A stretch of DNA of 63,967 bases, counting the filler, from Reticulomyxa filosa (Eukaryota > Protista > Foraminifera): the NCBI GenBank assembly GCA_000512085.1. It is 21 parts of 21 records of this genome, joined end to end, with 100 filler letters (N's around TTAATTAATTAA, not from the genome) between each part and the next. Parts side by side here need not be neighbours in the genome. Positions count along the whole stretch, not along the records: positions 37,876 to 38,918 come from ASPP01005032.1; 20 more parts are not named here. One strand, written 5' to 3'. Shown here piece by piece: positions 7,815 through 60,485 of this stretch. The stretch's first letter is position 1. Each line of letters begins with the position of its first letter. Position numbers and translations under genes: made by a program. The notes beneath the pieces are model-generated. The model was not told where the DNA came from. It searched no databases and was given only the letters and a program-made list of their open reading frames with translations.

Positions 7815-9640
7815 TTATTATTATTATTATTATTTTATTAAAAGAAAACTTGTTTGGCAATGTCGTTGACTTCTTCGTCCAATCCTTTTTCCTTTTCTTC
7901 CAATTGTCTTTCTTTCTCTTCCAGTTTTTTAATTTTCTCTTCATGGCCGACTTTCATTCGTGCCAACGTGCTGTCTTTTTCTTGCATCAGCTTTTTTGCT
8001 TCTTCCAACTCTCGTTTTAATTGCCCTGCCTCTCTTCCAGAGCCCACTGTTCCACATACATTTTGCACATTGCTTCATCGTCATGGTAGAATTATTTATT
8101 TATTTAAAAATTCACTGAAATGATTTAACTGGCAGAATATGCACTATCAAATACTTCCAAAGAGGAATGCAACCCCGTCATGGCCTCGCTCAAAACTTGA
8201 ATCCTTTTTTTTATCTCTTGATGGCACTTCTCCATTTGTTGCGTGACGAATATACACTCCTCCGACTTTGCGACACTCCATCTCTCGTCTTTTATGTTTC
8301 ATTTCGTATGTGAATATGTGCGCATGTGCGCATGTAGTATATGCATATAATACAAAATCGGCAATCGCGTATGCGTGCAAAGCCACTCAACACAACACAA
8401 AGAACTTGTTGCATGGCTGTTATTTTTCGCATTAGTATTCGATGAATGGTCACTTGTGCCAACAGTGTCTATTCGAGCACAAGTGTCAATCAATGACGTT
8501 ATTATTATTATTGCCAATTGTTATTATTGTTATTATTTTGATGATTCATATATTTGTTTATTTCAATACTTTTTCGAAAAAAAGTGGTTTTCGGAGAAGT
8601 CGCATTAGAAGCTCTTGTGGTCGAAGGGCTCTTGTTTCTTCCTCGCACCTCTTCATCGCCAATCGGCATTGGTTCCACGTTCAGTTTTGTCCCCTTTTCA
8701 TCTTTTTTTTTTTTTTTTTAAGAGAGGAAATAGTCATATAGCAAAGTCATCAATTTTGTATCTTTTTTTTTTTTTTTTTGTGGGAAAGAAAAGAAATATA
8801 TCCAACAGATACCATTATCATAAAGTACCACTCCTTTCATGTCATCGACTAAAGTGCTCAATTTCGACACACTTTTTTTTTTTTTTTTTTTTTTGTAACA
8901 AATCTCTCCCTTCGCAAAAAAAACAGTGTTCTTTTTTTTGAAAAAAAGAACAAAAAGAGAAAATTGGACCTGTGATCCAGTTTCTGCAATTCCAAATAAC
9001 ACTTCCCCAAACCTGACCCGACAGCCAATCCAATTTGAAATTGGACGACGGGCTTTTGGTAGTCTTTGCTGTTGTCATCATCAGCGCCATTAACGGACGT
9101 ATGCTCTTCCGTTTTTTTTGTTGGCTGTTGCGACGCTGCTGCCGGTGGCTGTCATCTTTCGCACACTACCATTGCTATTGCCGCGTGTTGTCGTCTGTGG
9201 ATCGGGTGTGATGGTGTTGTCACTATCCAGACTGGAACCTGTATCCCTCTCTCGGACTGTCGAATTTCCACGAGTACCCTTTTTTTTTCATAAAAAAAAA
9301 TTTTCGAACATTCGCTTCGTTGAAATATTTTTTAAAAAACAGAAATTCGGTTTCGCAATAGTTGAAAAGTACACCTCCAAGTTTCTGAAAATTCGATCAA
9401 TTGATGGCTTGGCAACTGTTGCGTTTGTTCCTCCAATGTCGTGGCTCAAAGCTTTCGAATGCTTTCGATTTCTCATGCTACTCTGCCGTGTACGCTCGTC
9501 ACTGTTCCGTCTGAATTAACTAGGATTGTATTTAATCCTAATGTTGGATTACTTGTGAGGAAAGTGTTGGTATTATTGTTAGACGGTATATTTCCACTAT
9601 TACCGCTTAATGCTTTTGATGACATCATATCAAAACTTAT
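7815..9640 (-). CDS. multi-exon hypothetical protein with coiled-coil C-terminal part (truncated by contig end)
   Basis: Coiled-coil exon 7850-8070 (LKRELEEAKKLMQEK...), low-complexity exons and A-run-AG acceptors at ~8702, ~8762, ~9279. Confidence 0.45.
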
Positions 9641-10209: not shown

Positions 10210-12834
10210 ATGGGTCTTTTTGATGGAGGTGACGGTCTTGATTTGGGTGTGGTGTCGTCACCATTAAATCTAGTGTTGTTGGTGGCTTCTGGATGTGTGT
10301 TGGGAGCGGCTGTGTTTACATGTTTCTTATTTACGCAGCATATGCCTTTGCTTTGCACGCTATGTTACATTGTGTATGAATTGTTGAGCGGGTATCGTGT
10401 GTTTGGATCGACATTGTCAGCGCTGTCAATGTATCTGCTATTGTTCATCGCAACAAAGTATATTTTCGTCCTCATGGTTAATAGAGCTAAAATAAAAAGT
10501 GTCTTTTTTTAAAAAAAAAGTGTCGCAATAAATGAGCGAAAATGTGTAGTAAGCATATGAAAAAAAAAATTTACGTAGGAGATCCAGTGTCATTGTGGAG
10601 TGCACTTTGGATGCGCGACGACGAATGGGGCGACCAAAAAAAGAGCAGCAAACGAGGTGTGGAAGAAGCAAAGAGGAGTCAAATGATGGAATTTCAACAT
10701 TTGTATTGCGTATTGCTATATGTGTCACATTTGCCGACCAAAGAAGAATTGGCAAAAGTGATCGCGCGGATCATGCCGCATTATCCACAGCTAAGAAATA
10801 TTCCCTTAATTGCTCAATCGATGATTCGCTCTTCATTTGTTTCAGGTAATTTTTTTTTCCCCCCCCCCCTTTTTTAATTTGTAAAAAAAAAAAAAAATGT
10901 GGACCATACGACAAATCCATGTTTTGATAAAAATGGACGGACATTAAAGAAAGTTAGTGAAATGAAAGTGGAAGAACACATCTACGAGTGTCGTGTGGAT
11001 AAGAAAATATTAGAAGGGAATTTGGACGAGTTGTGTCTAAAACAAAAGATGGACCCTCGCAAGCCCTGGTGGGACGTGTACTTGCTAACGCCGAACGTGC
11101 CTAATGACGAGGAAGCGTTGAACCCTCTTCAAGCCACTCTGTGCGTGGTAGTATTTCGCTTTCATCAGGCCATTATCGACCTGCCCACGGTCGAGCAATG
11201 GGTCAACGATTTGAGCAATTGCTTTCGTCGTCTCTATCATCACTCTGTGGATGACTTTGGACTCAATGGCAATAATGACAATGATATTGATGACATTTAT
11301 AATAACATTAATGACGACGAAGAAGAAGACGAAAAAATGACCGAATTGATCAATGAAAAGCAAACCCCAAATCCACAACCACAATTCCAACCCAGCAAAA
11401 ACAAATCCAAAAACATTGCCTTGTCAAAACACAAAAGCAAAAGCAAAAGCAAAAGCATTCGGCGATTGATTGACGAAAACACAGAAGATCGAATTGAAGA
11501 AGAGATTGCTGCTATGAATCGAGATTCTACTGCTAGCTTTATGTCACAATCTTTGTTTCGTATTGGATAAATAGTAGGAGGAGTCCCCCTTTTTTTCCTC
11601 ATCTTTTAATTTTTTTAAAAAAATAATAATAATAAATAAAAACATAGAAATAATCGCGTGAAATGGCTCTATGTGCATCTGCGAAATCTCTACATTTGGG
11701 TGCAAGATGGACTGACGATAGCCAAAATATGGCTTAATGCCGACGGCAATGTGTTTTCAAATGACAGCGCAAACAAAGGCAATGACAATGGCAATGACAA
11801 TGGCAATGATCAAGCCAATGCGCTGATCATTGTAAACCAGAGCTTTGAAGACACGCCATTTCATGCCATTGCCAAACAAAGCCGTGCCAAGTTTACGCAT
11901 ATCGCACGGAGTTGTGTGGCCGGTGCCATCGTTCGCTATTGCAATGACGAGAGTAGCCAAGGCCGACCATTGGATTCTCAAATCAAACGCGATAGCAAAG
12001 ATAATAATAATGACGATGGCAACGATGAGGCTACTCTCTCGTCGCGTCTTGGACGCTTGAGCAAAGCTCGCATATTGGAAGATTTCGACTTGTCACAAAA
12101 TGAAACCTTGCCCAAATCACCCAATCTTTTCACTTCCTTGTTTTCTAGATTTTTTAATCACTCGTTCCATACCTTTGTAGGAGTCTGGAAGGGCACTCAT
12201 TGGGTCGAAATGCTACCGTCCCCTTTATTCCAAGAAAAAATTGGTCTGACCAGCATCCCTTTGGCCATTGGCGAACAGTTTGCTCATGCTAGACAGAGAT
12301 TGATGCATGTTGCAAAACCTACTGACGTGTTTCGTTGTTGTTGTTGTTGTTGTTTTTTTTTTTGTTTTAATGATTTTTATTTGTCTTTGTTTGTTTGAGG
12401 ATAGATATGAAGAGTATCGCTGGTGTTGGTGGATAAACAAGTTCCTGGAACTATGCGCAAACGTCTTCCCTGATCGCATGTGCAAGTCGATCATTGCTCG
12501 GTTCTTCCGACATCACACCATCGAACTTTGCTATTTTTCTTGTCCAACGTATTTGGTCATTGGAAACGAACCTGCTGAAGACATGCGAGTTAAATTTTGT
12601 TCTTGTCTTTTTGCTTACTATTTTGCCGTTTACATTTGTTTCGTGGGTGTTCGTGAAAAAAAGGTACTCAAGACCAATTTAAATATCCCTTGTTTATGCA
12701 TTAGCACTTACAATGATCGTATTTGCTTGGATCTAACTTATTATGGAAATTGTATGACAAAGCCAGAGAGGTTTATGCAGGGCTTTTTGGCCGAAATGGA
12801 GGATTTAGAAGCCATGTTTGCTCATTCCTCTTAA
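10210..12834 (+). CDS. Wax ester synthase/diacylglycerol acyltransferase (WS/DGAT)-like protein with N-terminal transmembrane segments, multi-exon
   Basis: IMPHYPQLR; KMDPRKPWWDVYLL; VVVFRFHQAIID (HHxxxDG position); C-terminal LCISTYNDRICLDL...PERFMQGFLAEMEDL resembling WS_DGAT_C. Confidence 0.7.
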
Positions 12835-27494: not shown

Positions 27495-29167
27495 ATGTCA
27501 GAAGAAAAAAAAAAAAAGAGTTAAAGGTGTGGAAGAAGAAAATCAATTTGAAACAGTGACAAAGCTACTTCGCAAACAGCTGGAAATAAAAGATCGTGAA
27601 TGGTACCCAACAACATACAAAACATGTTTTGTGTGGAGAGGCAGTGTCACTGCCCGTGAGCTCAGGTGTAGCAAAGACACGCGAGCAAGCAGTGGAACTT
27701 ATGAATTTAGTGCTTGTGGCGAACGTCTTTGGCCACGTGATAAAAGACCACAGTGATCTCTCATCAAGATGCTTGTGAACGATTCACGAGAGTGTATGTG
27801 ACGGACGTGTTTTTGGGGCATGGAAAATTCATATCAAAAAATAAGATACGCCGTTGACGATTGTTGCACGAGATATCAGTTCACTCATATGGTTGATGCA
27901 ATGGCCAGAATATTCACGCCAAGTACAGTGATTTTGTTATCCTGTGGCGCACGTACACATTTCCGAAAGTGATACATGTGTGGTTGTACGAATGAGATAT
28001 ACAAATCCGTCGCATCGACTATGAAGTGATCAAAGTAGGCTTGAATCACATGGTAGAACCATTTGCAAAGATGAGACCGGTGGATTTGTCAAAATGTTGA
28101 TCAAAAAAGGATCGGACCAATCTTGTGATAATCCATTGTTAGCGAAAACGCTGGTGATCAAATCAATGAAGTCACTCTAGACATTCAAACTAACACCGGA
28201 CTCAGGTCCTTTGCTGGAGTTATCTATCCTTATCTAACTGTAGGAGAAGCTGTCAAAGTTTCTGGTGATACTTACAATCGCAATCTGTTAACTTCTGTTA
28301 CAAGAGCCTTGTTGCGGTAATGGATCCTTTGGAAAGTTTGTCGTTATTTTTTTACGTGTTTCTGTATGGTACTGTCTTTTTTTAAACAAAGAAAAAAAGT
28401 GTAATGTATTCATATATTGAAAGAGTGAAAGAAGGAAGCAAAAAGTGTCAATAAAAGTGATAAGTAAAGAAGAAATCAAGAAATGCAATCTTATAAGTAC
28501 GAAGGCATTAGAGATGCTACATCATCACAGACACTTGGCTCGTTTGCTAGAAGTGTTGGAGAGCAAATGTTATATATTGTGTTAGAATTGGTCAAATGTG
28601 GAGAGTTGTTCAATAAAATAAGTTGATTTAAAATAAGTAAAACACAACTACGTGTGTTCAATTCCATTTAATGTTTTCTTTTTTTATTGTATGCAAAAAA
28701 AGTGGGTTTTTTTTGACTGATCGGAAAAAAAAAAACAGGACAAAATGGTAAGCTAAATGTAGACGTGTCAAGAATATATTTCCAGCAACTGATAAACGGT
28801 GTTCAATTTATGCATAAGCATAAAATATGTCACAGAGATTTGAAAGTGGATGGTTTGTTAAAAAGTGCAATACATATATCAATTATATGTTATATACAAT
28901 GTGTGTATATATATTTATATGAAACATTGGTCATGTAGAGTTAAAGGCATGTTATAAACTTTGTATTAATTGAATAAATGCCTTGGCGAGGTGGGGTGAT
29001 GGAGAAAAGTTCGAAAACTTGCTGTGAATGCAAATAGAGTATTGAAGATATCCGACTTTGGACTGTCAGGTTTGTATTCGAGAGAAAGAGAAGTGTTCGG
29101 ACCCCAATTACGTGGCCCCTGAGGTATAAATGGAAAAGGATATGGCGGTTTTAAGGCTGATATTTGG
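27495..29167 (+). pseudogene. DEP domain + Ser/Thr kinase (CAMK/SNF1-CIPK-like) gene, disrupted
   Basis: DEP: LEIKDREWYPTTYKTCF/GEAV..SSGVAKTREQAVELMN..FGHVIKDH; kinase: GNGSFGK, VLELVKCGELFNKI, YFQQLINGVQFMHKHKICHRDLK, LKISDFGLS, GPQ/NYVAPEV, KADIW; many stops and frameshifts. Confidence 0.85.
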
Positions 29168-34212: not shown

Positions 34213-36239
34213 TTAATTTTCAACGTTAATAGATTCTGTGTTTGAGCAATTCGGCAACGCGGCCACGTTGGGAAATGACTGATATATTAAAAAAACCAAC
34301 AAACAAAGTAATTTCAGAAACAAATAAATAAACAAAAAACATACAATCTTCAATCCGCGTAATTGGAATGCAAGCCCGAGCAAAGGTGTAATTGGTGTAT
34401 CTTGTTGAAGCATAGCAGTCTTGGCATGCAATGCAGCTACTTTCTGTTGGGCAGTGTACGAATGGTCATTGAAACAGCAGTGATAAAGTAACTGCTCATA
34501 GTTACAAACGTCGATCACATCTTTAGTATTCTCATCTAAAACTTGATGAGAAAATAACCCTGGTGTGCACGAACAAACAAAATAATACATGAATGTCCAA
34601 GGGAAACAAAAAAAAAAAGTCAAGATATCAAAGCATAGATTGTGCAAAAAAATAATTTCATTTTATTTTTAACCAAATAAAAATTCCTTCCAAGGATTAC
34701 TTTTTTCATTGTCATTTGTTTGTTGCACAATGTCATCAATCCAAAGATGAACTATATTGAAAGACGCCCTGGTAACGCAATTATCGATTCGTGTGCAATT
34801 TGGACTTTCAAAAATTTGTTGGTATTCTAGCAATGCATGAATGGAAGGTATGCACGATTGTGTTGAGATCAGTTCTAATATCTGCAACAATTGAGCAACA
34901 AGCCACAATTTCCAATTGACAAATTCGTTATTTTCATCAAAATCCGGGACTCGAAATGGAGCCAGTTTTTTGGTTGAAATCCTCTCTCGATAATACCTTC
35001 CATGTTTGAGGTAGCCATCGTTCATTTCTGACATTTTCCGTGTCTGTCGCAAGAAAAGAGAAGAAGAGAGAGAAATTGATAGTGAAATTTTTTTATTTTT
35101 TTTTTTTTAAGACTCTGTTTTTCTGTTCAATGAAAGAGATGGAGGGAGAGGAAAAAAAAACCTTGTAAATTTGTCAAAAATCCAAGCATATCAACTAGCA
35201 TAATGACACCAGAAGGTGCTTGATTTTGCAAAGATGATTGAATTTTTCGGAGTTGAGAAATTTTAAAAGCACCTCTATTTTTTAATTTTCGTTATACGTT
35301 GTTTTTTTTTTTTTGATATAAATTTTGCTTTGTTTGTGGGTACGTCTTATTTTGCATTATTTGCAAGTAACTCAAGTTCTTGTTCCATTTGCACCGATTG
35401 TTTGATGGGTGCAGGTAAGGGATGAAGCAGAAGGTCATTGTCAATAAGTACATTGTCACTGTTTAGCAACAAGCGGTGATACAATGGGCTTTCTTGTTCA
35501 ATATTGTCTTGCACGTACAAAATCAAAGATTGAATGGCTTCGTCTTCAGACGCAATCCTTAGGCGAATCCATTCGTCCAATTTTGACATGGTGTTGTTAT
35601 GTTGACTGAAGATGTGGCTCCAGATTTTTTCAGTCACCGACAACAGCCGTTGTAGCCTCATCTCCAATCGAATTTTTCATTGTTGTAAATTCTTATTTTC
35701 TCTTCCTAAATGAACCAAAGGCAGGTCATACACAAAGTAAATTTTTTAACCTAAAAAAAAAAAAAAAGTACTTTTAAGCAAATAATGATTTTTAAACTTT
35801 CAATGCCAAGTTCTGATCAGCATTTTTCTCGTCACTGGTGCGCATGCTATTATCAACTCCTTTGTTGTTCTTGCTCGCAGTTTTGGACACGCGTGCATCC
35901 GTTTCTTCTGCTGCAGCCAAGTTGATTGTCTCGCTTATTTTTGTCAGACATGTCGCAATTGCATTTTGCAAATATTTCAATGAACCTTCATTTGTTGTCT
36001 CTTCCGCTGCCAATTGGGGCTTTTGTGGAGCCTTGGCTTTCACTTTTTTATCGGTCTTCGTTTGGGTGGCTGCATTCACGACCTCGCTTATTTTGACCAA
36101 CTTCAGAGGCTCTTCGCTCTATGATTTGGATAATTGCCAACACACACACACACATAAATTTTGCGCATATAATTATATACATATACATATATACATATAT
36201 ATTTTTTAATTGTTAAAAAGTTACTTTTTTGGAGTCACC

Positions 36240-36240
<1 letters not shown>
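34213..36240 (-). CDS. SPEF2: SPEF2/KPL2 (axonemal central-pair protein), C-terminal part, multi-exon, with apparent frameshifts
   Basis: DEWIRLRIASEDEAIQSL..IEQE..LLL..DNVLID..LLHPLP; FKISQL..LQNQAPSGVI; LPQTW; NNEFVNWKLWLV; KEFLFGLF..NYEQLLYHCC follow the SPEF2 C-terminal motif order as I recall it. Confidence 0.72.
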
Positions 36241-36271
<31 letters not shown>

Positions 36272-36376
36272 GGGGGNNNNNNNNNNNNNNNNNNNNNNNN
36301 NNNNNNNNNNNNNNNNNNNNTTAATTAATTAANNNNNNNNNNNNNNNNNNNNNNNNNNNNNNNNNNNNNNNNNNNN

Positions 36377-37099: not shown

Positions 37100-38249
37100 T
37101 GTTTTTCCCTTGAAGGTAGATTTTGTTATAATGATTGCTCAGAGATTATTGATTTCGTCCAAGGTTTTTTTTATGAATTAGGGAAAACAACGAATACGAA
37201 ATTAAAACAGAAATTTCGTAAGAAAACGGAAGAATTTATTATATTATGGATATTGAAATGATTTATGCAAAAATTTCATTATTTAGACAATCTTACTTGT
37301 AAAAAATTGAATACAATAGAAAAGATATTTATCACAATGGAAAATATTATAAAATTCTTTGTTTTTCATCCAACTGCATAAAAAAATGCAACACCAGCTG
37401 GGACGTGATTTCTATATGTGACTGCAGAGTTTTGATTTAAAGTAGAATGAAGTACGTGTATATTTATTTCTTTATTTAAACTCAAATTAACCTTTTTACG
37501 TTCTGTCTTTAATCAAATTTAACTTTTTTTTGGTGTGCTCAAACATTATTACATCAATAAAAGTGATTGTCCAAATATAATTATTTAATAATAAGAAGCA
37601 ACAAATATTTTTTGCCTTAAATGCAGAAATAAGCAGGAAGTTATCTAGAAAAAACAAAAATCTATATTATTATGTCAAAGAAACAATGGTGCATCATAAT
37701 ATCATATGCTCACTGAAGCAAAAACTAATAAATTCATACGTTTGAAATTTGATAAATAGACAATATTCTTAATGANNNNNNNNNNNNNNNNNNNNNNNNN
37801 NNNNNNNNNNNNNNNNNNNTTAATTAATTAANNNNNNNNNNNNNNNNNNNNNNNNNNNNNNNNNNNNNNNNNNNNTCTCAACGGTAAGTTGCAACATCAA
37901 ATTTCATCCGTAAATAAAATGTATGGGAATACCTTCGAAAGGTAACCTTAATAGTACTCACATTCATCACAAGAGCTAACCAAAAAAAAAAGTGAATAAA
38001 CGAGTTTAAGAAAGAGACAGAATTAACCTTTCCAAGTATGAAGTGTTTTAAGTATAAAAACATTCGCTCTCCAACAATAAGATGTGCTAAATCAACGGAC
38101 AAACCTTTCAAAAGGTTCAACCGACAACAGAAAAGGTCGGTTCGGTTAGGCCGCGCATGATGTCAGCATCAGATTATACTTCAGCTTCTTCAAAAGATAA
38201 AGAGCAGGTTAAATATATTTGGCCTGTTAAAATGGACAATTGACAAAAG

Positions 38250-38918
38250 AAGCCTTTTGGTACTGAAAAAGAAAAAGTTTGGGGGGATGCGTGAAAAAAA
38301 AATAGACACCTGTGTCACTCTTGAAAATGGGAAAAAATCAAAATCAATTAGTAGAAGCGAGCAAATCAAAAAAACAAGCAACCAATCAGCAAGAGAAAAG
38401 AGACTCTCGCCCAATCAAAAACGAGATGAGTCCAATGGGAGCAACCCCATTGAACGGGTCAACTCAACTGCAATTACTAGCCCACCAACTCGGTAAAAAC
38501 AAGCAAAAACCTTTTCCAAAAAAAATTTCAAACCAACAATTTTTTTTTTTTTTTTAATTAAAAAAAAAAAAAAAAGACGAATCAAAAAAAGAAAATGAAA
38601 AAAAAGAAGATAAAATAACGAGACTGGAAGAAGAGATATCAAAAATGAGAGAAACGCATGATAAAGAGGTGAAAGATTTGCAAAAAGAGCTTGAGGAAAC
38701 ACGTAAAGAGAAGAAGCAAATGGAAATGACCCAACAACAGTTGTTAGAAGAAATGCAGCAATTGCAAAAGCATCTACAAGATAACACCAGACACGTTGAT
38801 GAGTCCATTACCACCGACAACAATGACGATTATAATCGACTCCTACCAGCTGATTATCTCAAAACACAAGTTGTATTATTATTATTTCTGTTGCTACAAT
38901 TGTTTCGTTTTTTTTTTT
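38250..38918 (+). CDS. coiled-coil hypothetical protein fragment, intron ~38493-38576
   Basis: EEEISKMRETHDKEVKDLQKELEETRKEKKQMEMTQQQLLEEMQQLQKHLQ. Confidence 0.5.
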
Positions 38919-45089: not shown

Positions 45090-48000
45090 ACTACCAACAG
45101 CAACAACACCGACAAATCATGAAGAAGCCGATGATAAGAAGACCAATGCAACAGAGTTGCCTACTCAAAGTACAAGTGAAAATATATTGTGTGAAGACAC
45201 TGGCGACTCATCAGCCTCTTCCAAAAGGCGAGCCGTTCGGCGTCCATTAACACGTCCTGGCAATGGTGTATTTAATAACTTGTCACCAACATCTTCTGAT
45301 CCGACCTTGACATTAGGTTTGTTTGCATTACATAAAAGTGTTTATATATATGTATATAGACATATGTATATATGTGTATAAATAAAGATTTTACTAAAAA
45401 CACACACTCTTTTTTTTAAAAAAAAAAGAAACAGACAGCAAAAAGCGACTACTCAATGAAACGTATGATGGTGATGACGACAATGAACAAACTTATGTCC
45501 CAAGTCCTAAACGGCAAAGAAGAAATAGCACCGGGACAAATAGTCCGAACAAAAGAGACTTGGAAAGTACCAATGACCCAACTTCAGATGCTATGTTTTG
45601 TTCCACGGCAGTTCCGCCCGCTATTTCGCCCACATTGATGGTCGAGGATCAAGGAACGTCCTCCGTGTCCTCCTCAACTTCAGCGCTTGTGACAAGTGGT
45701 GAATCCGGTTCCACCGTCCCGCAGGTCCCACCATCGTCGCCTTCCAAAGCAAAAGAAAAAAAGCCCAGCGACAAGGAAGCACAACAGCAAAAAGAAGACG
45801 CAGAGAAAAAAATGTGCGAAAAAGCACGTAAGACTGTTCGAGAGACCTTCGGACATTACTTTAATCAAGAGCGTTGCCTTACCTTGGAAAATTATTTGTA
45901 TTCAACTTATGGAGTGGGCTCGTCCAGAAATTGGAATAAAGGAATTTTGGAAAGAATCGACGATTTTCTTCCTAGCAGCGACAAAGGCCAAAGTTCTGAC
46001 CAATCAAAATATATACAAATAAACGGATCATAAATTCATTGTAACAACAACAATCACTGTCATATAATTTGCATTTATGTTACAAACATTTATTGATGTG
46101 GATATTAAAAAAAAAAAAAAAAAAAAGGGGTAGTTGAATAATCTCTATGTGAACAAGTATTTCGAAGTAATGGAGAGACTAAATGAGTTCCCTTCTTTAG
46201 CAAAACTCGTGCAAATGGGTGAGTTGGATATAACTAAAATTTTATACGTGAGCGAGAATGAAATCGTTGATGCCGCACGTAAAACTCATGCAGATGCAAA
46301 ATTGCTGCAACAATTATCCTCTTTGGTCGGCGAAGTTTTGGCACAAGACATAATCAAGCTGGCCAAACAATACAGCAAGAAAGACAAAACCAAGTACCGC
46401 GATAAAATGAGAGACTTAATGTTCAACTTGCACAAGAACACCAAACTCATTAATCGTCTACAAAGCGGAAATATGACCGCAGAGCAGTTGGTTTTTGCTA
46501 CCAATGAAGAATTAGCTTCGGAGGAAATTTCCGAATATCGCAATAAAGTGCGAAAAGAAATAGCTCAAGCACAGGTTTGTACTACGTATAAACATGTATA
46601 CGTATTCCACGGATTTTTTTATTTCGGTTTTTTTATTTTTATTTTTTTAAAAAAAACAGATCATTCATGAAAAGTTGACGGACTTAAAACGAGAAGGATT
46701 AATCAAAAAACAAGTCGAAGTAAAGCCCGATGATATTCCGTTGTCCGAGTCGATTGTTAAAGAAATGGCAACCACAATTGGATCAGCTATAAATGCCGCG
46801 AGCAACAATGGCAGTGCTGTTAGCAATCAGAACGGCAATGATTCTGCTTTGCAAATTCAACAAGTGACGCAGCCCCAACGCCTAATAACCAAATTGGAAA
46901 GTGATTCGTCGGAAGGTGATGACCAAAGCCTTTTAAAAAATGTTACAAAATCCAAACTCAATGACAACACAGGTACAAAGCCGATTAATAATTTTTGCTT
47001 TCATAGCGAAAAATAATTTTTTTTTTTTTTTGTATGTACGGCACATATCCCAGAAACAATAACGCTTACGCACAATGAAGGAAATGAGGATAAGGAGATT
47101 ACAAGTGAAAAAGAAGTGATTAATGGAATATCATCGCCAAAAGAAAAAAATACAATAGACACAGCAACAGACAAAGTGATAGTAAAACTTGATGAAAAGG
47201 AAGACTTGCCCAACAAAGTGAATGAATTGGTGTTTGAAAGCAGACAAAGTGATAGTGAAAGTGAAGTGGAAGAAATTGTTTCGAATCAAACACCCACCAA
47301 AATTGAAGTTAATCTGGGCGCGGAAGAAGATGATGGCAATGTCACTTTTGTGGGATTATTCAATGATCCCAATCCTCATTCTCAACAAGATAGTTCAACA
47401 AAGAAATCAAGTGATTCCACGGGAACAACGAAAAAAGTCGTGGAAGATGCAAAACGACTTTTGACAGTATCACCATCACAAGACGCAACCTCACCCGAAG
47501 GAAGCGAGCAAGACACCGAAAGCGAAGAAAACAAGAAAAAAGAAAAAAAAGGAAAATCCACGTTTTTGAGTGCTGGAAAAACGCACCTCTCATCCAAAAA
47601 AAAACGTTTTCAAAAAACAAAAGAGAAACACTCAAATGATGACGAAGGCGATAATAAAAAATCAAAACTCCGCAAGAAAAATCAACCTGGACAAAATGGA
47701 AAAACGGCGGATAAACATTCGTACTTGTGGAAAGGGTCTCTGGAATATCGTGATGGGGACGGAAAAGATGCCGTTTTCAAGTGTAAGCTATTTCAAATTG
47801 GTGGGGATCCTGTTCAGCGGTTACCCGCCTCATCAAAAATTTCCATGACGGGGCGAATTGCTCCGAAGGAGTTAGAGGCACATGTGATCAAAGTTTGGTT
47901 TAATAATAATAAACAATAAGGGAGGAGAAAAAAATGCAAGACTTGTTGTCGCAACCATTTAAAAAAAAAAACGCAACAGTCGTTAAATCACGCTCGTCGA

Positions 48001-59439: not shown

Positions 59440-60485
59440 AGATAATAATTGAAAATTGGCTCCGATGTTCATTTGTTAATCGAGGATGGATTGATGATTT
59501 CAACAAGATTGTTGCCCGCTATGTTAAGTGGTTTGAAAGAGTGTTTAAATTTGTATTAAAAGACACTAGTCATTTATCATTTGTCATAAAAAAAAAAATA
59601 GGCGAGATTTTTTAGACAGTTGAAAGTTTTTATTGGACATAACGATAGTATAACAAGTACAAAATTTTCTCCAGACAGACAGAAAATTGCATCCTCTTCA
59701 TTTGAGGAACAGTTCGAATATGGGACACAGTGTCTGGAGATACAATTCAAAAATTGGAAGGACATTCACATTGGGTGTACAATGTGCAATTTTCTTACAA
59801 CGGCAGTTCCGTTTTGTCCTGTTCAAATGATAAAACAATTCGAATATGGGATGTGTCCTCTGGACAAGAGTTAAAAAAGTTAGATGGACACGAAGGCTGC
59901 GTGTTTGCAGCTCAATTTTCACCAGATGGCACAGTTGTTGCATCATGCTCTTATGACAGAACAATTCGATTATGGAATGTAACATCCGGACAAGAACTAA
60001 AAAGATTAAATGGACATTCCGATTTTGTTACTGATGTAAAATTCTCGTCTGATGGCAAACAGATTTTATCATCGTCTTTTGACAAAACTATTCGAATATG
60101 GGATGTAGAATCAGGCAACGTCTTACTCGAATTTCAAGGGCACGCCGATGGTGTAATTGGGGTTCAATTTTCACCTGATGGAAGCATTATCGCATCTTGT
60201 TCGAGAGACAAAACAATCCGGTTATGGAACACGAAATCAGGAAAAGAAATTCGGACAATTACAGGACATGCGGACTGGGTAAGAGAAGTACAGTTTTCTC
60301 CAGATGGACAAACAATTGTTTCGTGTTCTGATGATAAAACAGTTAGACTGTGGGACACTAAGTCTGGAAAGCTAATACAAAGATTAGATGGACATTCAAA
60401 TTTGGTGACAGGAATATGCTTTTCATCAGATGGCAATACGATGATTTCATCTTCTTATGATAAAAGCATTCGGTTGTGGGGATAA
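59440..60485 (+). CDS. WD40-repeat protein (7 repeats), one frameshift near 59706
   Basis: N-terminal IIENWLRCSFVNRGWIDDFNKIVARY; regular GH..V.FSPDG..S.S.DKTIR.W repeats. Confidence 0.92.

What the first reader, a model, noticed from the sequence alone, without database searches (positions are those of the whole stretch)
38493..38576. Introns ending in A-runs or T-run/A-run hairpins instead of a polypyrimidine tract: candidate structure-assisted splicing system
Seen: in unrelated genes on both strands the predicted acceptor AG is preceded by adenines, often pairing with an upstream T-run. Plus-strand examples: T16-AATT-A16-G (38540-38576, a perfect palindrome ending in the acceptor), T-run..A11CAG (28707-28738), T7A8CAG (~46643-46659), T8A-run-GAAACAG (~45410-45434), A-run-CGCAACAG (47961-47979), A-run-TAG (59588-59601), T7A7..AAAAACATAG (11610-11647). 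Minus-strand examples: C5-T14-A18-G (36239-36276), T9-ATG-A9-G (9279-9300), A-run-G (~8702, ~8762), A12-TAG (~25946). Established: U2AF65 normally binds a U-rich tract at this position, and in fish complementary (AC)n/(GT)n repeats are reported to let RNA structure replace U2AF2. Inference: this lineage may define 3' splice sites by homopolymer hairpins and/or an A-tract-binding factor. Some introns (e.g. SPEF2 ~35750) keep a normal T-tract, implying two classes.
Basis: partly seen in the sequence, partly recalled or inferred. Interest (0 to 1): 0.8.

Follow-up and report, generated by a model that had tools for sequence, protein, structure and literature searches.

The report
A-tract-ended intron in a foraminifer
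This is most likely an ordinary short intron of the foraminifer Reticulomyxa filosa whose 3' end is a run of sixteen A's after sixteen T's; A-rich intron ends are the majority pattern in this genome's annotation, but nothing here shows that the T/A hairpin helps splicing.

Summary
The piece is the whole 1,043-bp contig ASPP01005032.1 of Reticulomyxa filosa. T16-AATT-A16-G is at 38540-38576 exactly as described. It closes an 84-nt, phase-1 GT..AG intron (38493-38576), and the GenBank gene model splices at that AG. The gene is an orphan coiled-coil protein with no homologues, so the intron rests on one prediction plus sequence logic: an in-frame stop inside, the first AG after any plausible branch site, and a length close to the genome mean of 87.

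A published table supports the "A-rich acceptor" half genome-wide. 31,807 of 60,647 annotated R. filosa 3' splice sites (52.4%) are purine-rich, mostly A. That is the highest I saw among intron-rich species in the parts of the table I read.

The same table argues against the hairpin half. In that class T falls steadily towards the acceptor, with no upstream T-tract.

The U16:A16 helix is predicted to form, but it would bury the -2 A and the only branch-site-like motif.

The fish AC/GT system bridges the two intron ends, and this hairpin does not.

Verdict: a real, ordinary intron of a documented purine-rich class. The lineage-level lack of a pyrimidine tract deserves an RNA-seq test. Structure-assisted splicing is unsupported.

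The parts
38306..38492 (+). Exon 1 of GenBank model P0001. The CDS is 5'-partial and starts right after A9-TAG; an in-frame ATG gives MGKNQNQ...
   Evidence: gene at locus 431-997, which is window 38306-38872. Translation. T-poor (16%) like exon 2.
38493..38576 (+). Predicted 84-nt phase-1 GT..AG intron. It is 54% A, 31% T and 16% G+C, with an in-frame TAA at 38555-38557.
   Evidence: Its length is close to the genome mean of 87 bp (PMC13746701).
38493..38500 (+). Donor site, G|GTAAAAAC
   Evidence: The junction is implied by the P0001 sequence.
38540..38555 (+). T16 run, the 5' arm of the palindrome. It may serve as a U-rich tract upstream of the branch site.
38553..38558 (+). TTAAT-containing palindrome centre: the only yUnAy branch-site-like motif in the intron. 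Candidate branch A at 38557, 19 nt before G38576.
   Evidence: motif scan. Use as a branch point is inferred, not shown.
38560..38575 (+). A16 run, the 3' arm of the palindrome. It is a G-free spacer whose last A is the A of the acceptor AG.
   Evidence: P(paired with U16) is about 0.9 and the -2 A is paired with probability 0.56-0.87.
38575..38576 (+). Predicted acceptor AG, the first AG downstream of 38506
38577..38872 (+). Exon 2 of P0001, a K/E/Q-rich coiled coil. The model ends at a donor-like GTATTA; the frame stays open to the contig end.
   Evidence: Pfam gives only generic coiled-coil noise. Atlas structure neighbours are long-helix proteins.
37884..37992 (+). Second candidate intron, unannotated. 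GTAAGT donor, CTAAC with branch A at 37979, then C-A10-G acceptor, followed by stops in all frames and AATAAA.
   Evidence: Suggestive only, because just 8 nt of the upstream exon lie in the contig.

Best explanation
Positions 38493-38576 are an ordinary short U2-type GT..AG intron of an orphan coiled-coil gene of Reticulomyxa filosa, a genome whose annotated introns mostly lack a polypyrimidine tract and end A-rich.

Likely mechanism, with each step marked as shown or inferred:

1. The donor is G|GUAAAA. This is shown as sequence and is the junction used by the gene model.
2. The branch point lies in UUAAU at the palindrome centre (A38557). This is inferred; it is the only yUnAy motif in the intron and sits at the canonical -19.
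3. The acceptor is simply the first AG downstream. A16 contains no G, so the first G after it makes the first AG (inferred, scanning model).
4. The A-run is therefore a tolerated AG-free spacer, drawn from an A-rich sense strand and probably lengthened by replication slippage. It is not a dedicated signal.
5. U16 just upstream may supply the U-richness that marks introns in AT-rich eukaryotes. It would act like the tracts that sit upstream of the branch site in fungi (inferred).
6. The U16:A16 hairpin is a by-product of two adjacent complementary runs. If it forms in vivo it has to be melted for branch-site and AG recognition, so it is neutral or mildly inhibitory rather than assisting.
For: Contig and organism identity.

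The GenBank model splices exactly 38492|38577.

The intron contains an in-frame TAA, and the reading frame is restored across the junction.

Its length is 84 nt against a genome mean of 87.

A published table gives 52.45% purine-rich 3' splice sites out of 60,647. In that class A rises towards the AG and G is depleted, as expected from AG exclusion. T falls, with no displaced pyrimidine tract.

An independent-position expectation for an intron interior that is 52% purine is already 41% purine-rich sites. So 52% means absence of a pyrimidine tract plus a modest A excess.

The local + strand is 43% A, and A-run-G sites also occur in exon and intergenic sequence.

TTAAT is the only yUnAy motif, 19 nt from the AG. 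The second candidate intron has CTAAC 13 nt before an A10-G acceptor.

The hairpin would pair the -2 A with probability 0.56-0.87 and hold the branch motif in its loop and upper stem.
Against: The gene has no homologues at all, so the model is unsupported from outside.

Exon 1's open frame is not statistically compelling in T-poor sequence.

The genome-wide figures rest on a computational annotation of a highly fragmented assembly.

The two longest runs of the piece being adjacent, complementary and of equal length (16/16) is unusual: 3.4% of run-preserving shuffles of the piece reach a stem of 16 bp or more.

The hairpin is predicted to be stable, about -14 kcal/mol at 20 C.
Confidence: 0.6

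Rival explanations
1. Structure-assisted 3' splice-site definition. The U16:A16 hairpin is functional. It could bring a distant upstream branch point (for example CCAAC, A38536, 40 nt away) close to the AG, or it could replace U2AF65 binding, in a class of R. filosa introns.
For: The helix is predicted with probability about 0.9, at -8.5 kcal/mol at 37 C and about -14 at 20 C. As DNA the z-score is -2.85. [quoted passage not shown] The arms are perfect and of equal length.
Against: The published purine-rich matrix shows no T enrichment upstream of the A-rich zone. Closing the helix leaves only about 5 nt between A38536 and the AG, and it pairs the -2 A. The only consensus branch motif lies inside the hairpin. 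The RNA z-score is -0.93. Given both runs in one intron, adjacency occurs in about half of shuffles. The second candidate acceptor, A10-G at 37992, has no T-run.
Confidence: 0.12
2. A-tracts are a positive 3' splice-site signal in Foraminifera, read by a diverged U2AF65, Mud2 or other RNA-binding protein. No hairpin role is implied.
For: R. filosa is an extreme outlier at 52.45% purine-rich 3' splice sites. This is well above much more AT-rich genomes such as P. falciparum at 6.5-14%. Within the class, A rises position by position to 73% at -4.
Against: 52% is only modestly above the 41% expected from neutral intron composition. The gradient can come from AG exclusion and from autocorrelation within runs. 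Equally A-rich AG sites in exon 2 are not used by the model. No factor was examined.
Confidence: 0.12
3. It is not an intron. The gene model is wrong, translation of the coiled-coil protein starts at ATG 38645, and T16-AATT-A16 lies in a promoter or 5' UTR (poly(dA:dT) tracts).
For: The gene has no homologues or family. Two + strand frames are open over exon 1, which shows low stop-codon density in T-poor sequence. An in-frame ATG exists at 38645.
Against: GT..AG with the frame restored, a length typical for the genome, exon 1 composition matching exon 2 (T 16-17%) rather than intergenic DNA (24%), and the deposited model.
Confidence: 0.14
4. Assembly artefact: the exact 16/16 run lengths, or the palindrome itself, come from homopolymer sequencing or assembly error.
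For: The contig itself ends in a T11 run. Later authors note that repeats fragmented this assembly (PMC13746701).
Against: The flanks are unique and are not inverted copies of each other, so this is not a fold-back chimera. Only the run lengths, not the existence of the runs, would be affected.
Confidence: 0.05

Closest known systems
Purine-rich 3' splice sites (REPA class) surveyed in more than 1,000 species (Nguyen & Xie 2019, PMC6339879)
   Same: At least 5 purines in -10 to -3 (here 8 of 8, all A). A pyrimidine run displaced upstream (T16 at -37 to -22). R. filosa itself is in their tables, with 31,807 such sites.
   Different: Their functional work concerns G-tracts bound by hnRNP H/F as repressors in vertebrates. 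Here the element is an A homopolymer. In R. filosa as a whole the class shows no displaced pyrimidine tract.
Fish (AC)m-(GT)n bridged introns that do not need U2AF2 (Lin et al. 2016, PMC4691745)
   Same: Complementary simple repeats within one intron that can base-pair. The pyrimidine tract is dispensable.
   Different: The fish repeats sit at opposite intron boundaries and pair the 5' and 3' splice sites. Here both arms lie at the 3' end, 4 nt apart, nothing pairs with the 5' end, and the repeats are homopolymers giving weak A-U pairs only.
[quoted passage not shown]
   Same: A local hairpin in the 3' part of the intron that could shorten the effective distance from branch point to AG.
   Different: Yeast stems lie between a fixed UACUAAC and an accessible 3' splice site in long spacers. 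Here the AG's A is the closing pair and the only branch-like motif is inside the hairpin.
Introns without a 3' polypyrimidine tract in fungi and some protists (Irimia & Roy 2008, PMC2483917)
   Same: No pyrimidine tract between branch site and AG. The acceptor is defined by the branch site plus a nearby AG.
   Different: Those extreme cases (Yarrowia, Trichomonas, Giardia) have a branch site anchored 2-4 nt from the AG. The R. filosa matrix shows no anchored motif, and the spacers here are 13 and 19 nt.

Membership tests
U2-type GT-AG spliceosomal intron | GT donor and AG acceptor that restore the reading frame, with a stop codon in the retained sequence | tested here: met
   GT at 38493-94, AG at 38575-76, phase 1, TAA at 38555-57. 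The junction reads AHQL-D-ESKK in P0001.
U2-type GT-AG spliceosomal intron | Branch-site-like motif 10-40 nt upstream of the AG | tested here: met
   TTAAT with its A at 38557, 19 nt from G38576, is the only yUnAy motif. Actual use as a branch point is not shown.
U2-type GT-AG spliceosomal intron | Polypyrimidine tract between branch site and AG | tested here: not met
   Positions -17 to -2 are all A. T16 lies upstream of the candidate branch site.
U2-type GT-AG spliceosomal intron | Spliced junction seen in RNA | not testable with these tools
No transcript-derived protein is in the collection.
Purine-rich 3' splice-site class (Nguyen & Xie) | At least 5 purines between -10 and -3 | tested here: met
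   8 of 8 at 38576. Also 8 of 8 at 37992 and 7 of 8 at 38305.
Fish (AC)m-(GT)n bridged, U2AF2-independent introns | Complementary repeats at opposite intron boundaries that bridge the 5' and 3' splice sites | tested here: not met
   Both arms are at 38540-38575. The 5' 47 nt of the intron has no partner in the predicted fold.
Fish (AC)m-(GT)n bridged, U2AF2-independent introns | Splicing independent of U2AF2 | not testable with these tools
   This needs depletion or in vitro splicing experiments.
Yeast-type downstream stem (branch point to 3' splice site) | Stem of at least 6 bp lying wholly between the branch point and an accessible 3' splice site | tested here: inconclusive
   A 16-bp stem is predicted. 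It contains the only consensus branch motif and pairs the -2 A with probability 0.56-0.87. It would lie between branch point and AG only if a non-consensus branch at 38536 is used.
   In the published matrix of 31,807 purine-rich 3' splice sites, T falls from 0.35 at -50 to 0.27 at -11.

The most novel reading that the evidence does not exclude
Foraminifera, or at least Reticulomyxa, may have largely abandoned the polypyrimidine tract and use A-tracts next to the AG as a positive 3' splice-site signal. A diverged U2AF65/Mud2-like or other RNA-binding factor would read it. A subset of introns would pair the A-tract with an upstream U-run to tune acceptor use, for example with temperature.
Probability: 0.12. 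Interest if true: 0.7.

Novelty: new member of a known kind. Interest (0 to 1): 0.33.

Why it matters
As a single locus it is a curiosity: a perfect U16-AAUU-A16 palindrome whose last A is the acceptor's A.

The wider point is that R. filosa has the highest share of purine-rich acceptors I saw among intron-rich genomes in the parts of the published 1,000-species table that I read. The figure is 52% of about 60,000 sites, and that paper's main text names R. filosa in none of the passages I searched. If transcript data confirm it, Foraminifera would be a natural system for asking how a complete-looking spliceosome chooses 3' splice sites without a pyrimidine tract. If they do not, the number flags a systematic fault in the only foraminiferal genome annotation.

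Tried and rejected

Homologues that might validate the junction: two word-index searches, with exon 2 and with P0001, returned only the model itself. Exon 1 was not searched separately. Pfam gave nothing. The protein atlas gave only generic long-helix neighbours.

Rfam and the bacterial promoter/terminator scan gave nothing relevant.

The R. filosa genome paper (Glöckner et al. 2014) and Nguyen et al. 2018 (Gene) are not held. No held paper that I found discusses R. filosa splice-site composition.

I could not fetch further R. filosa contigs. No tool gives access to them without a protein identifier, and I did not type sequences from memory. So I did not compute my own genome-wide logo, the T-then-A versus A-then-T order test, or an inspection of U2AF/SF1.

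A fold-back chimera was rejected because the flanks are not inverted copies of each other.

I made no joined exon 1 + exon 2 query of my own. Only the database protein P0001 was used for the spliced form.

Full report
**What the piece is.** The 1,043 bases at 37876-38918 are the entire contig ASPP01005032.1 of the Reticulomyxa filosa assembly GCA_000512085.1, a naked freshwater foraminifer (Rhizaria). A protein search with the downstream open frame returned a single 161-aa GenBank protein at 100% identity. Its encoding contig is this piece, with the gene at locus 431-997, which is window 38306-38872. Later literature describes this assembly as 101.9 Mb in 50,809 scaffolds, N50 3.6 kb and 35% GC. 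It has about 2 introns per gene, a mean intron length of 87 bp and 30.5% repeats.

**Checking the observation.**
This is a perfect 36-nt palindrome.
- GT at 38493-38494 and AG at 38575-38576 delimit 84 nt.
- Exon 1 ends with one base of a codon. The deposited protein reads ...LLAHQL-D-ESKKENEKK..., which is precisely 38492 joined to 38577.
- Read-through would give ...NQQFFFFF and stop at TAA 38555-38557.
- The segment is 54% A, 31% T and 16% G+C, against 35-43% G+C in the flanking exons.
- AG 38575-76 is the first AG downstream of 38506. Any branch point in the 3' two-thirds of the intron would therefore select it under a first-AG rule.
- Three further A-run-AG sites, ending at 38591, 38606 and 38609, lie 15, 30 and 33 nt downstream and are all in frame. 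Frame alone therefore cannot settle which AG is used.

**What could not be checked.**
I neither retried nor trimmed the query, so there is no RNA evidence.
- The protein has no relatives among 5.8 billion clustered sequences and no Pfam family.
- Its atlas neighbours are generic long-helix proteins. Its GenBank name, "RNA polymerase omega subunit family", is unsupported.
- The intron therefore rests on one computational model plus sequence logic. I put about 0.75-0.8 on it being a real intron.

**Is it more than chance?**
- Locally, A before AG is not specific to acceptors. The + strand is 43% A and 23% T. Of 76 AGs, 13 have at least 7 A in the ten preceding bases, including sites in exon 2 and in intergenic DNA.
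- Shuffling the piece while keeping every homopolymer run intact gives a perfect stem of 16 bp or more in 17 of 500 trials. If both runs are confined to the 84-nt intron, that rises to 959 of 2000.
- What is unusual is having two 16-nt complementary runs in one short intron. Their forming a hairpin follows from that.
- The RNA fold is -8.8 kcal/mol with z = -0.93 against dinucleotide shuffles. As DNA it is -12.2 kcal/mol with z = -2.85.

**Genome-wide evidence from the literature.** Nguyen & Xie 2019 (PMC6339879) tabulated purine-rich 3' splice sites, defined as at least 5 purines in -10 to -3, for 1,175 Ensembl genomes.
- For R. filosa, Table S3 lists 31,807 of 60,647 sites, or 52.45%.
- The paper gives a protist mean of 14% and a maximum of 61%. 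That maximum is Edhazardia aedis with 11 of 18 introns.
- In the parts of the table I read, the only other value as high is Nosema apis, at 1,097 of 2,102. Other values:

| Genome | Purine-rich 3' splice sites |
|---|---|
| Bigelowiella | 11.6% |
| Plasmodiophora | 10.6% |
| Plasmodium falciparum | 6.5-14% |
| Paramecium | 19% |
| Dictyostelium lacteum | 27% |
| Naegleria | 30% |
| Tetrahymena | 33% |
| Entamoeba invadens | 45% |

- So A-rich acceptors are a real, lineage-level property of the R. filosa annotation, and AT-richness alone does not explain them.
- Table S1 gives the matrix for the purine-rich class. A is 0.35 at -50, 0.37 at -20 and 0.44 at -11. It then rises from 0.53 at -10 to 0.73 at -4. 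G falls to 0.11, as expected if upstream AGs are excluded.
- T falls steadily: 0.35, then 0.33 at -20, 0.27 at -11 and 0.10 at -4. In Brassica, wheat, soybean and Tetrahymena the same class shows T rising to 0.42-0.56 at -20 to -11, a displaced pyrimidine tract. R. filosa shows none.
- This argues directly against a T-run sitting upstream of the A-run as a common architecture.
- With an intron interior that is 52% purine, independent positions already predict 41% purine-rich sites. So 52% means no pyrimidine tract plus a moderate A excess, not a sharply defined A-tract signal.
- Multiplying the published columns gives roughly a thousand introns with A at every position from -10 to -4. This locus is an extreme member of a large class.
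- Caveat: all these numbers rest on a computational annotation of a fragmented assembly.

**Anatomy and likely mechanism.**
- The only yUnAy motif in the intron is TTAAT at the palindrome centre, with its A at 38557, 19 nt before the acceptor G.
- In a second, unannotated candidate intron at the start of the contig (37884-37992), a GTAAGT donor is followed by a perfect CTAAC 13 nt before a C-A10-G acceptor. After that acceptor come stops in all three frames and AATAAA.
- Both candidates fit one scheme: a branch site, then a short G-free and A-rich spacer, then the first AG. In the main intron the U-run lies upstream of the branch site rather than downstream.
- I therefore read the A-run as a tolerated AG-free spacer, drawn from an A-rich sense strand and lengthened by slippage. 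I read U16 as, at most, a U-rich intron mark. All of this is inference.
- Naked RNA is predicted to form the U16:A16 helix with probability about 0.9. The energy is -8.5 kcal/mol at 37 C and about -14 at 20 C.
- That helix pairs the acceptor's -2 A with probability 0.56-0.87 and holds the candidate branch motif in its loop and upper stem.
- If a non-consensus branch at A38536 were used instead, closing the helix would leave only about 5 nt to the AG.
- The structure therefore looks neutral or inhibitory rather than enabling.

**Comparison with known systems.**
- The fish precedent is real, but its architecture is different. There, AC and GT repeats at opposite intron boundaries bridge the two splice sites (PMC4691745).
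[quoted passage not shown] The present hairpin meets that definition only under an unfavoured choice of branch point.
- The best fit is the purine-rich 3' splice-site class, which already counts R. filosa. It also fits the general finding that many fungi and some other eukaryotes lack a 3' pyrimidine tract (PMC2483917).

**Verdict.**
A-rich acceptors are genome-wide and R. filosa is an outlier. The hairpin or structure-assisted part finds no support in the bulk data and is mechanistically awkward at this locus.
- The locus is a new member of a known kind.
- The species-level absence of a pyrimidine tract is the part worth following up, first with transcript-validated junctions.

Noticed in passing
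window 37884-38001: Unannotated candidate terminal intron of an upstream + strand gene. It has a GTAAGT donor at 37884, CTAAC with branch A at 37979, and a C-A10-G acceptor at 37992. After the acceptor come stop codons in all three frames within 7 codons and AATAAA at 37996-38001.
   Followed up: partly
window 38294-38306: The GenBank CDS begins at 38306, immediately after A9-TAG. This is either just the in-frame stop that bounds the ORF, or a third A-run acceptor chosen by the gene predictor for a 5'-partial model. An in-frame ATG (MGKNQ...) follows 7 codons later.
   Followed up: partly
window 38873-38918: The model ends at a donor-like GTATTA. Read-through in frame instead encodes a hydrophobic tail, VLLLFLLLQLFRFFF, up to the contig end. 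The protein may therefore be a tail-anchored coiled coil rather than having a further exon.
   Followed up: no
P0001 (window 38306-38872): The GenBank product name 'DNA-directed RNA polymerase, omega subunit family protein' has no support. There is no Pfam hit at E<=0.01 and no homologue in two word-index searches. It looks like an orphan K/E/Q-rich coiled coil.
   Followed up: yes
window 38908-38918: The contig ends in a T11 run, which suggests the assembly breaks at long homopolymers. The exact 16/16 run lengths in the palindrome may therefore be uncertain.
   Followed up: no
window 38119-38165: The putative promoter region holds a 7-bp inverted repeat, AACCGAC-N10-GTCGGTT (38119-38142), and a CRE/AP-1-like TGATGTCA (38158-38165). 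Their function is unknown.
   Followed up: no
window 38584-38609: Three further A-run-AG sites, with AGs ending at 38591, 38606 and 38609, lie 15, 30 and 33 nt downstream of the predicted acceptor. All are in frame, so alternative acceptor use would delete 5, 10 or 11 residues of a low-complexity K/E stretch without breaking the frame.
   Followed up: partly
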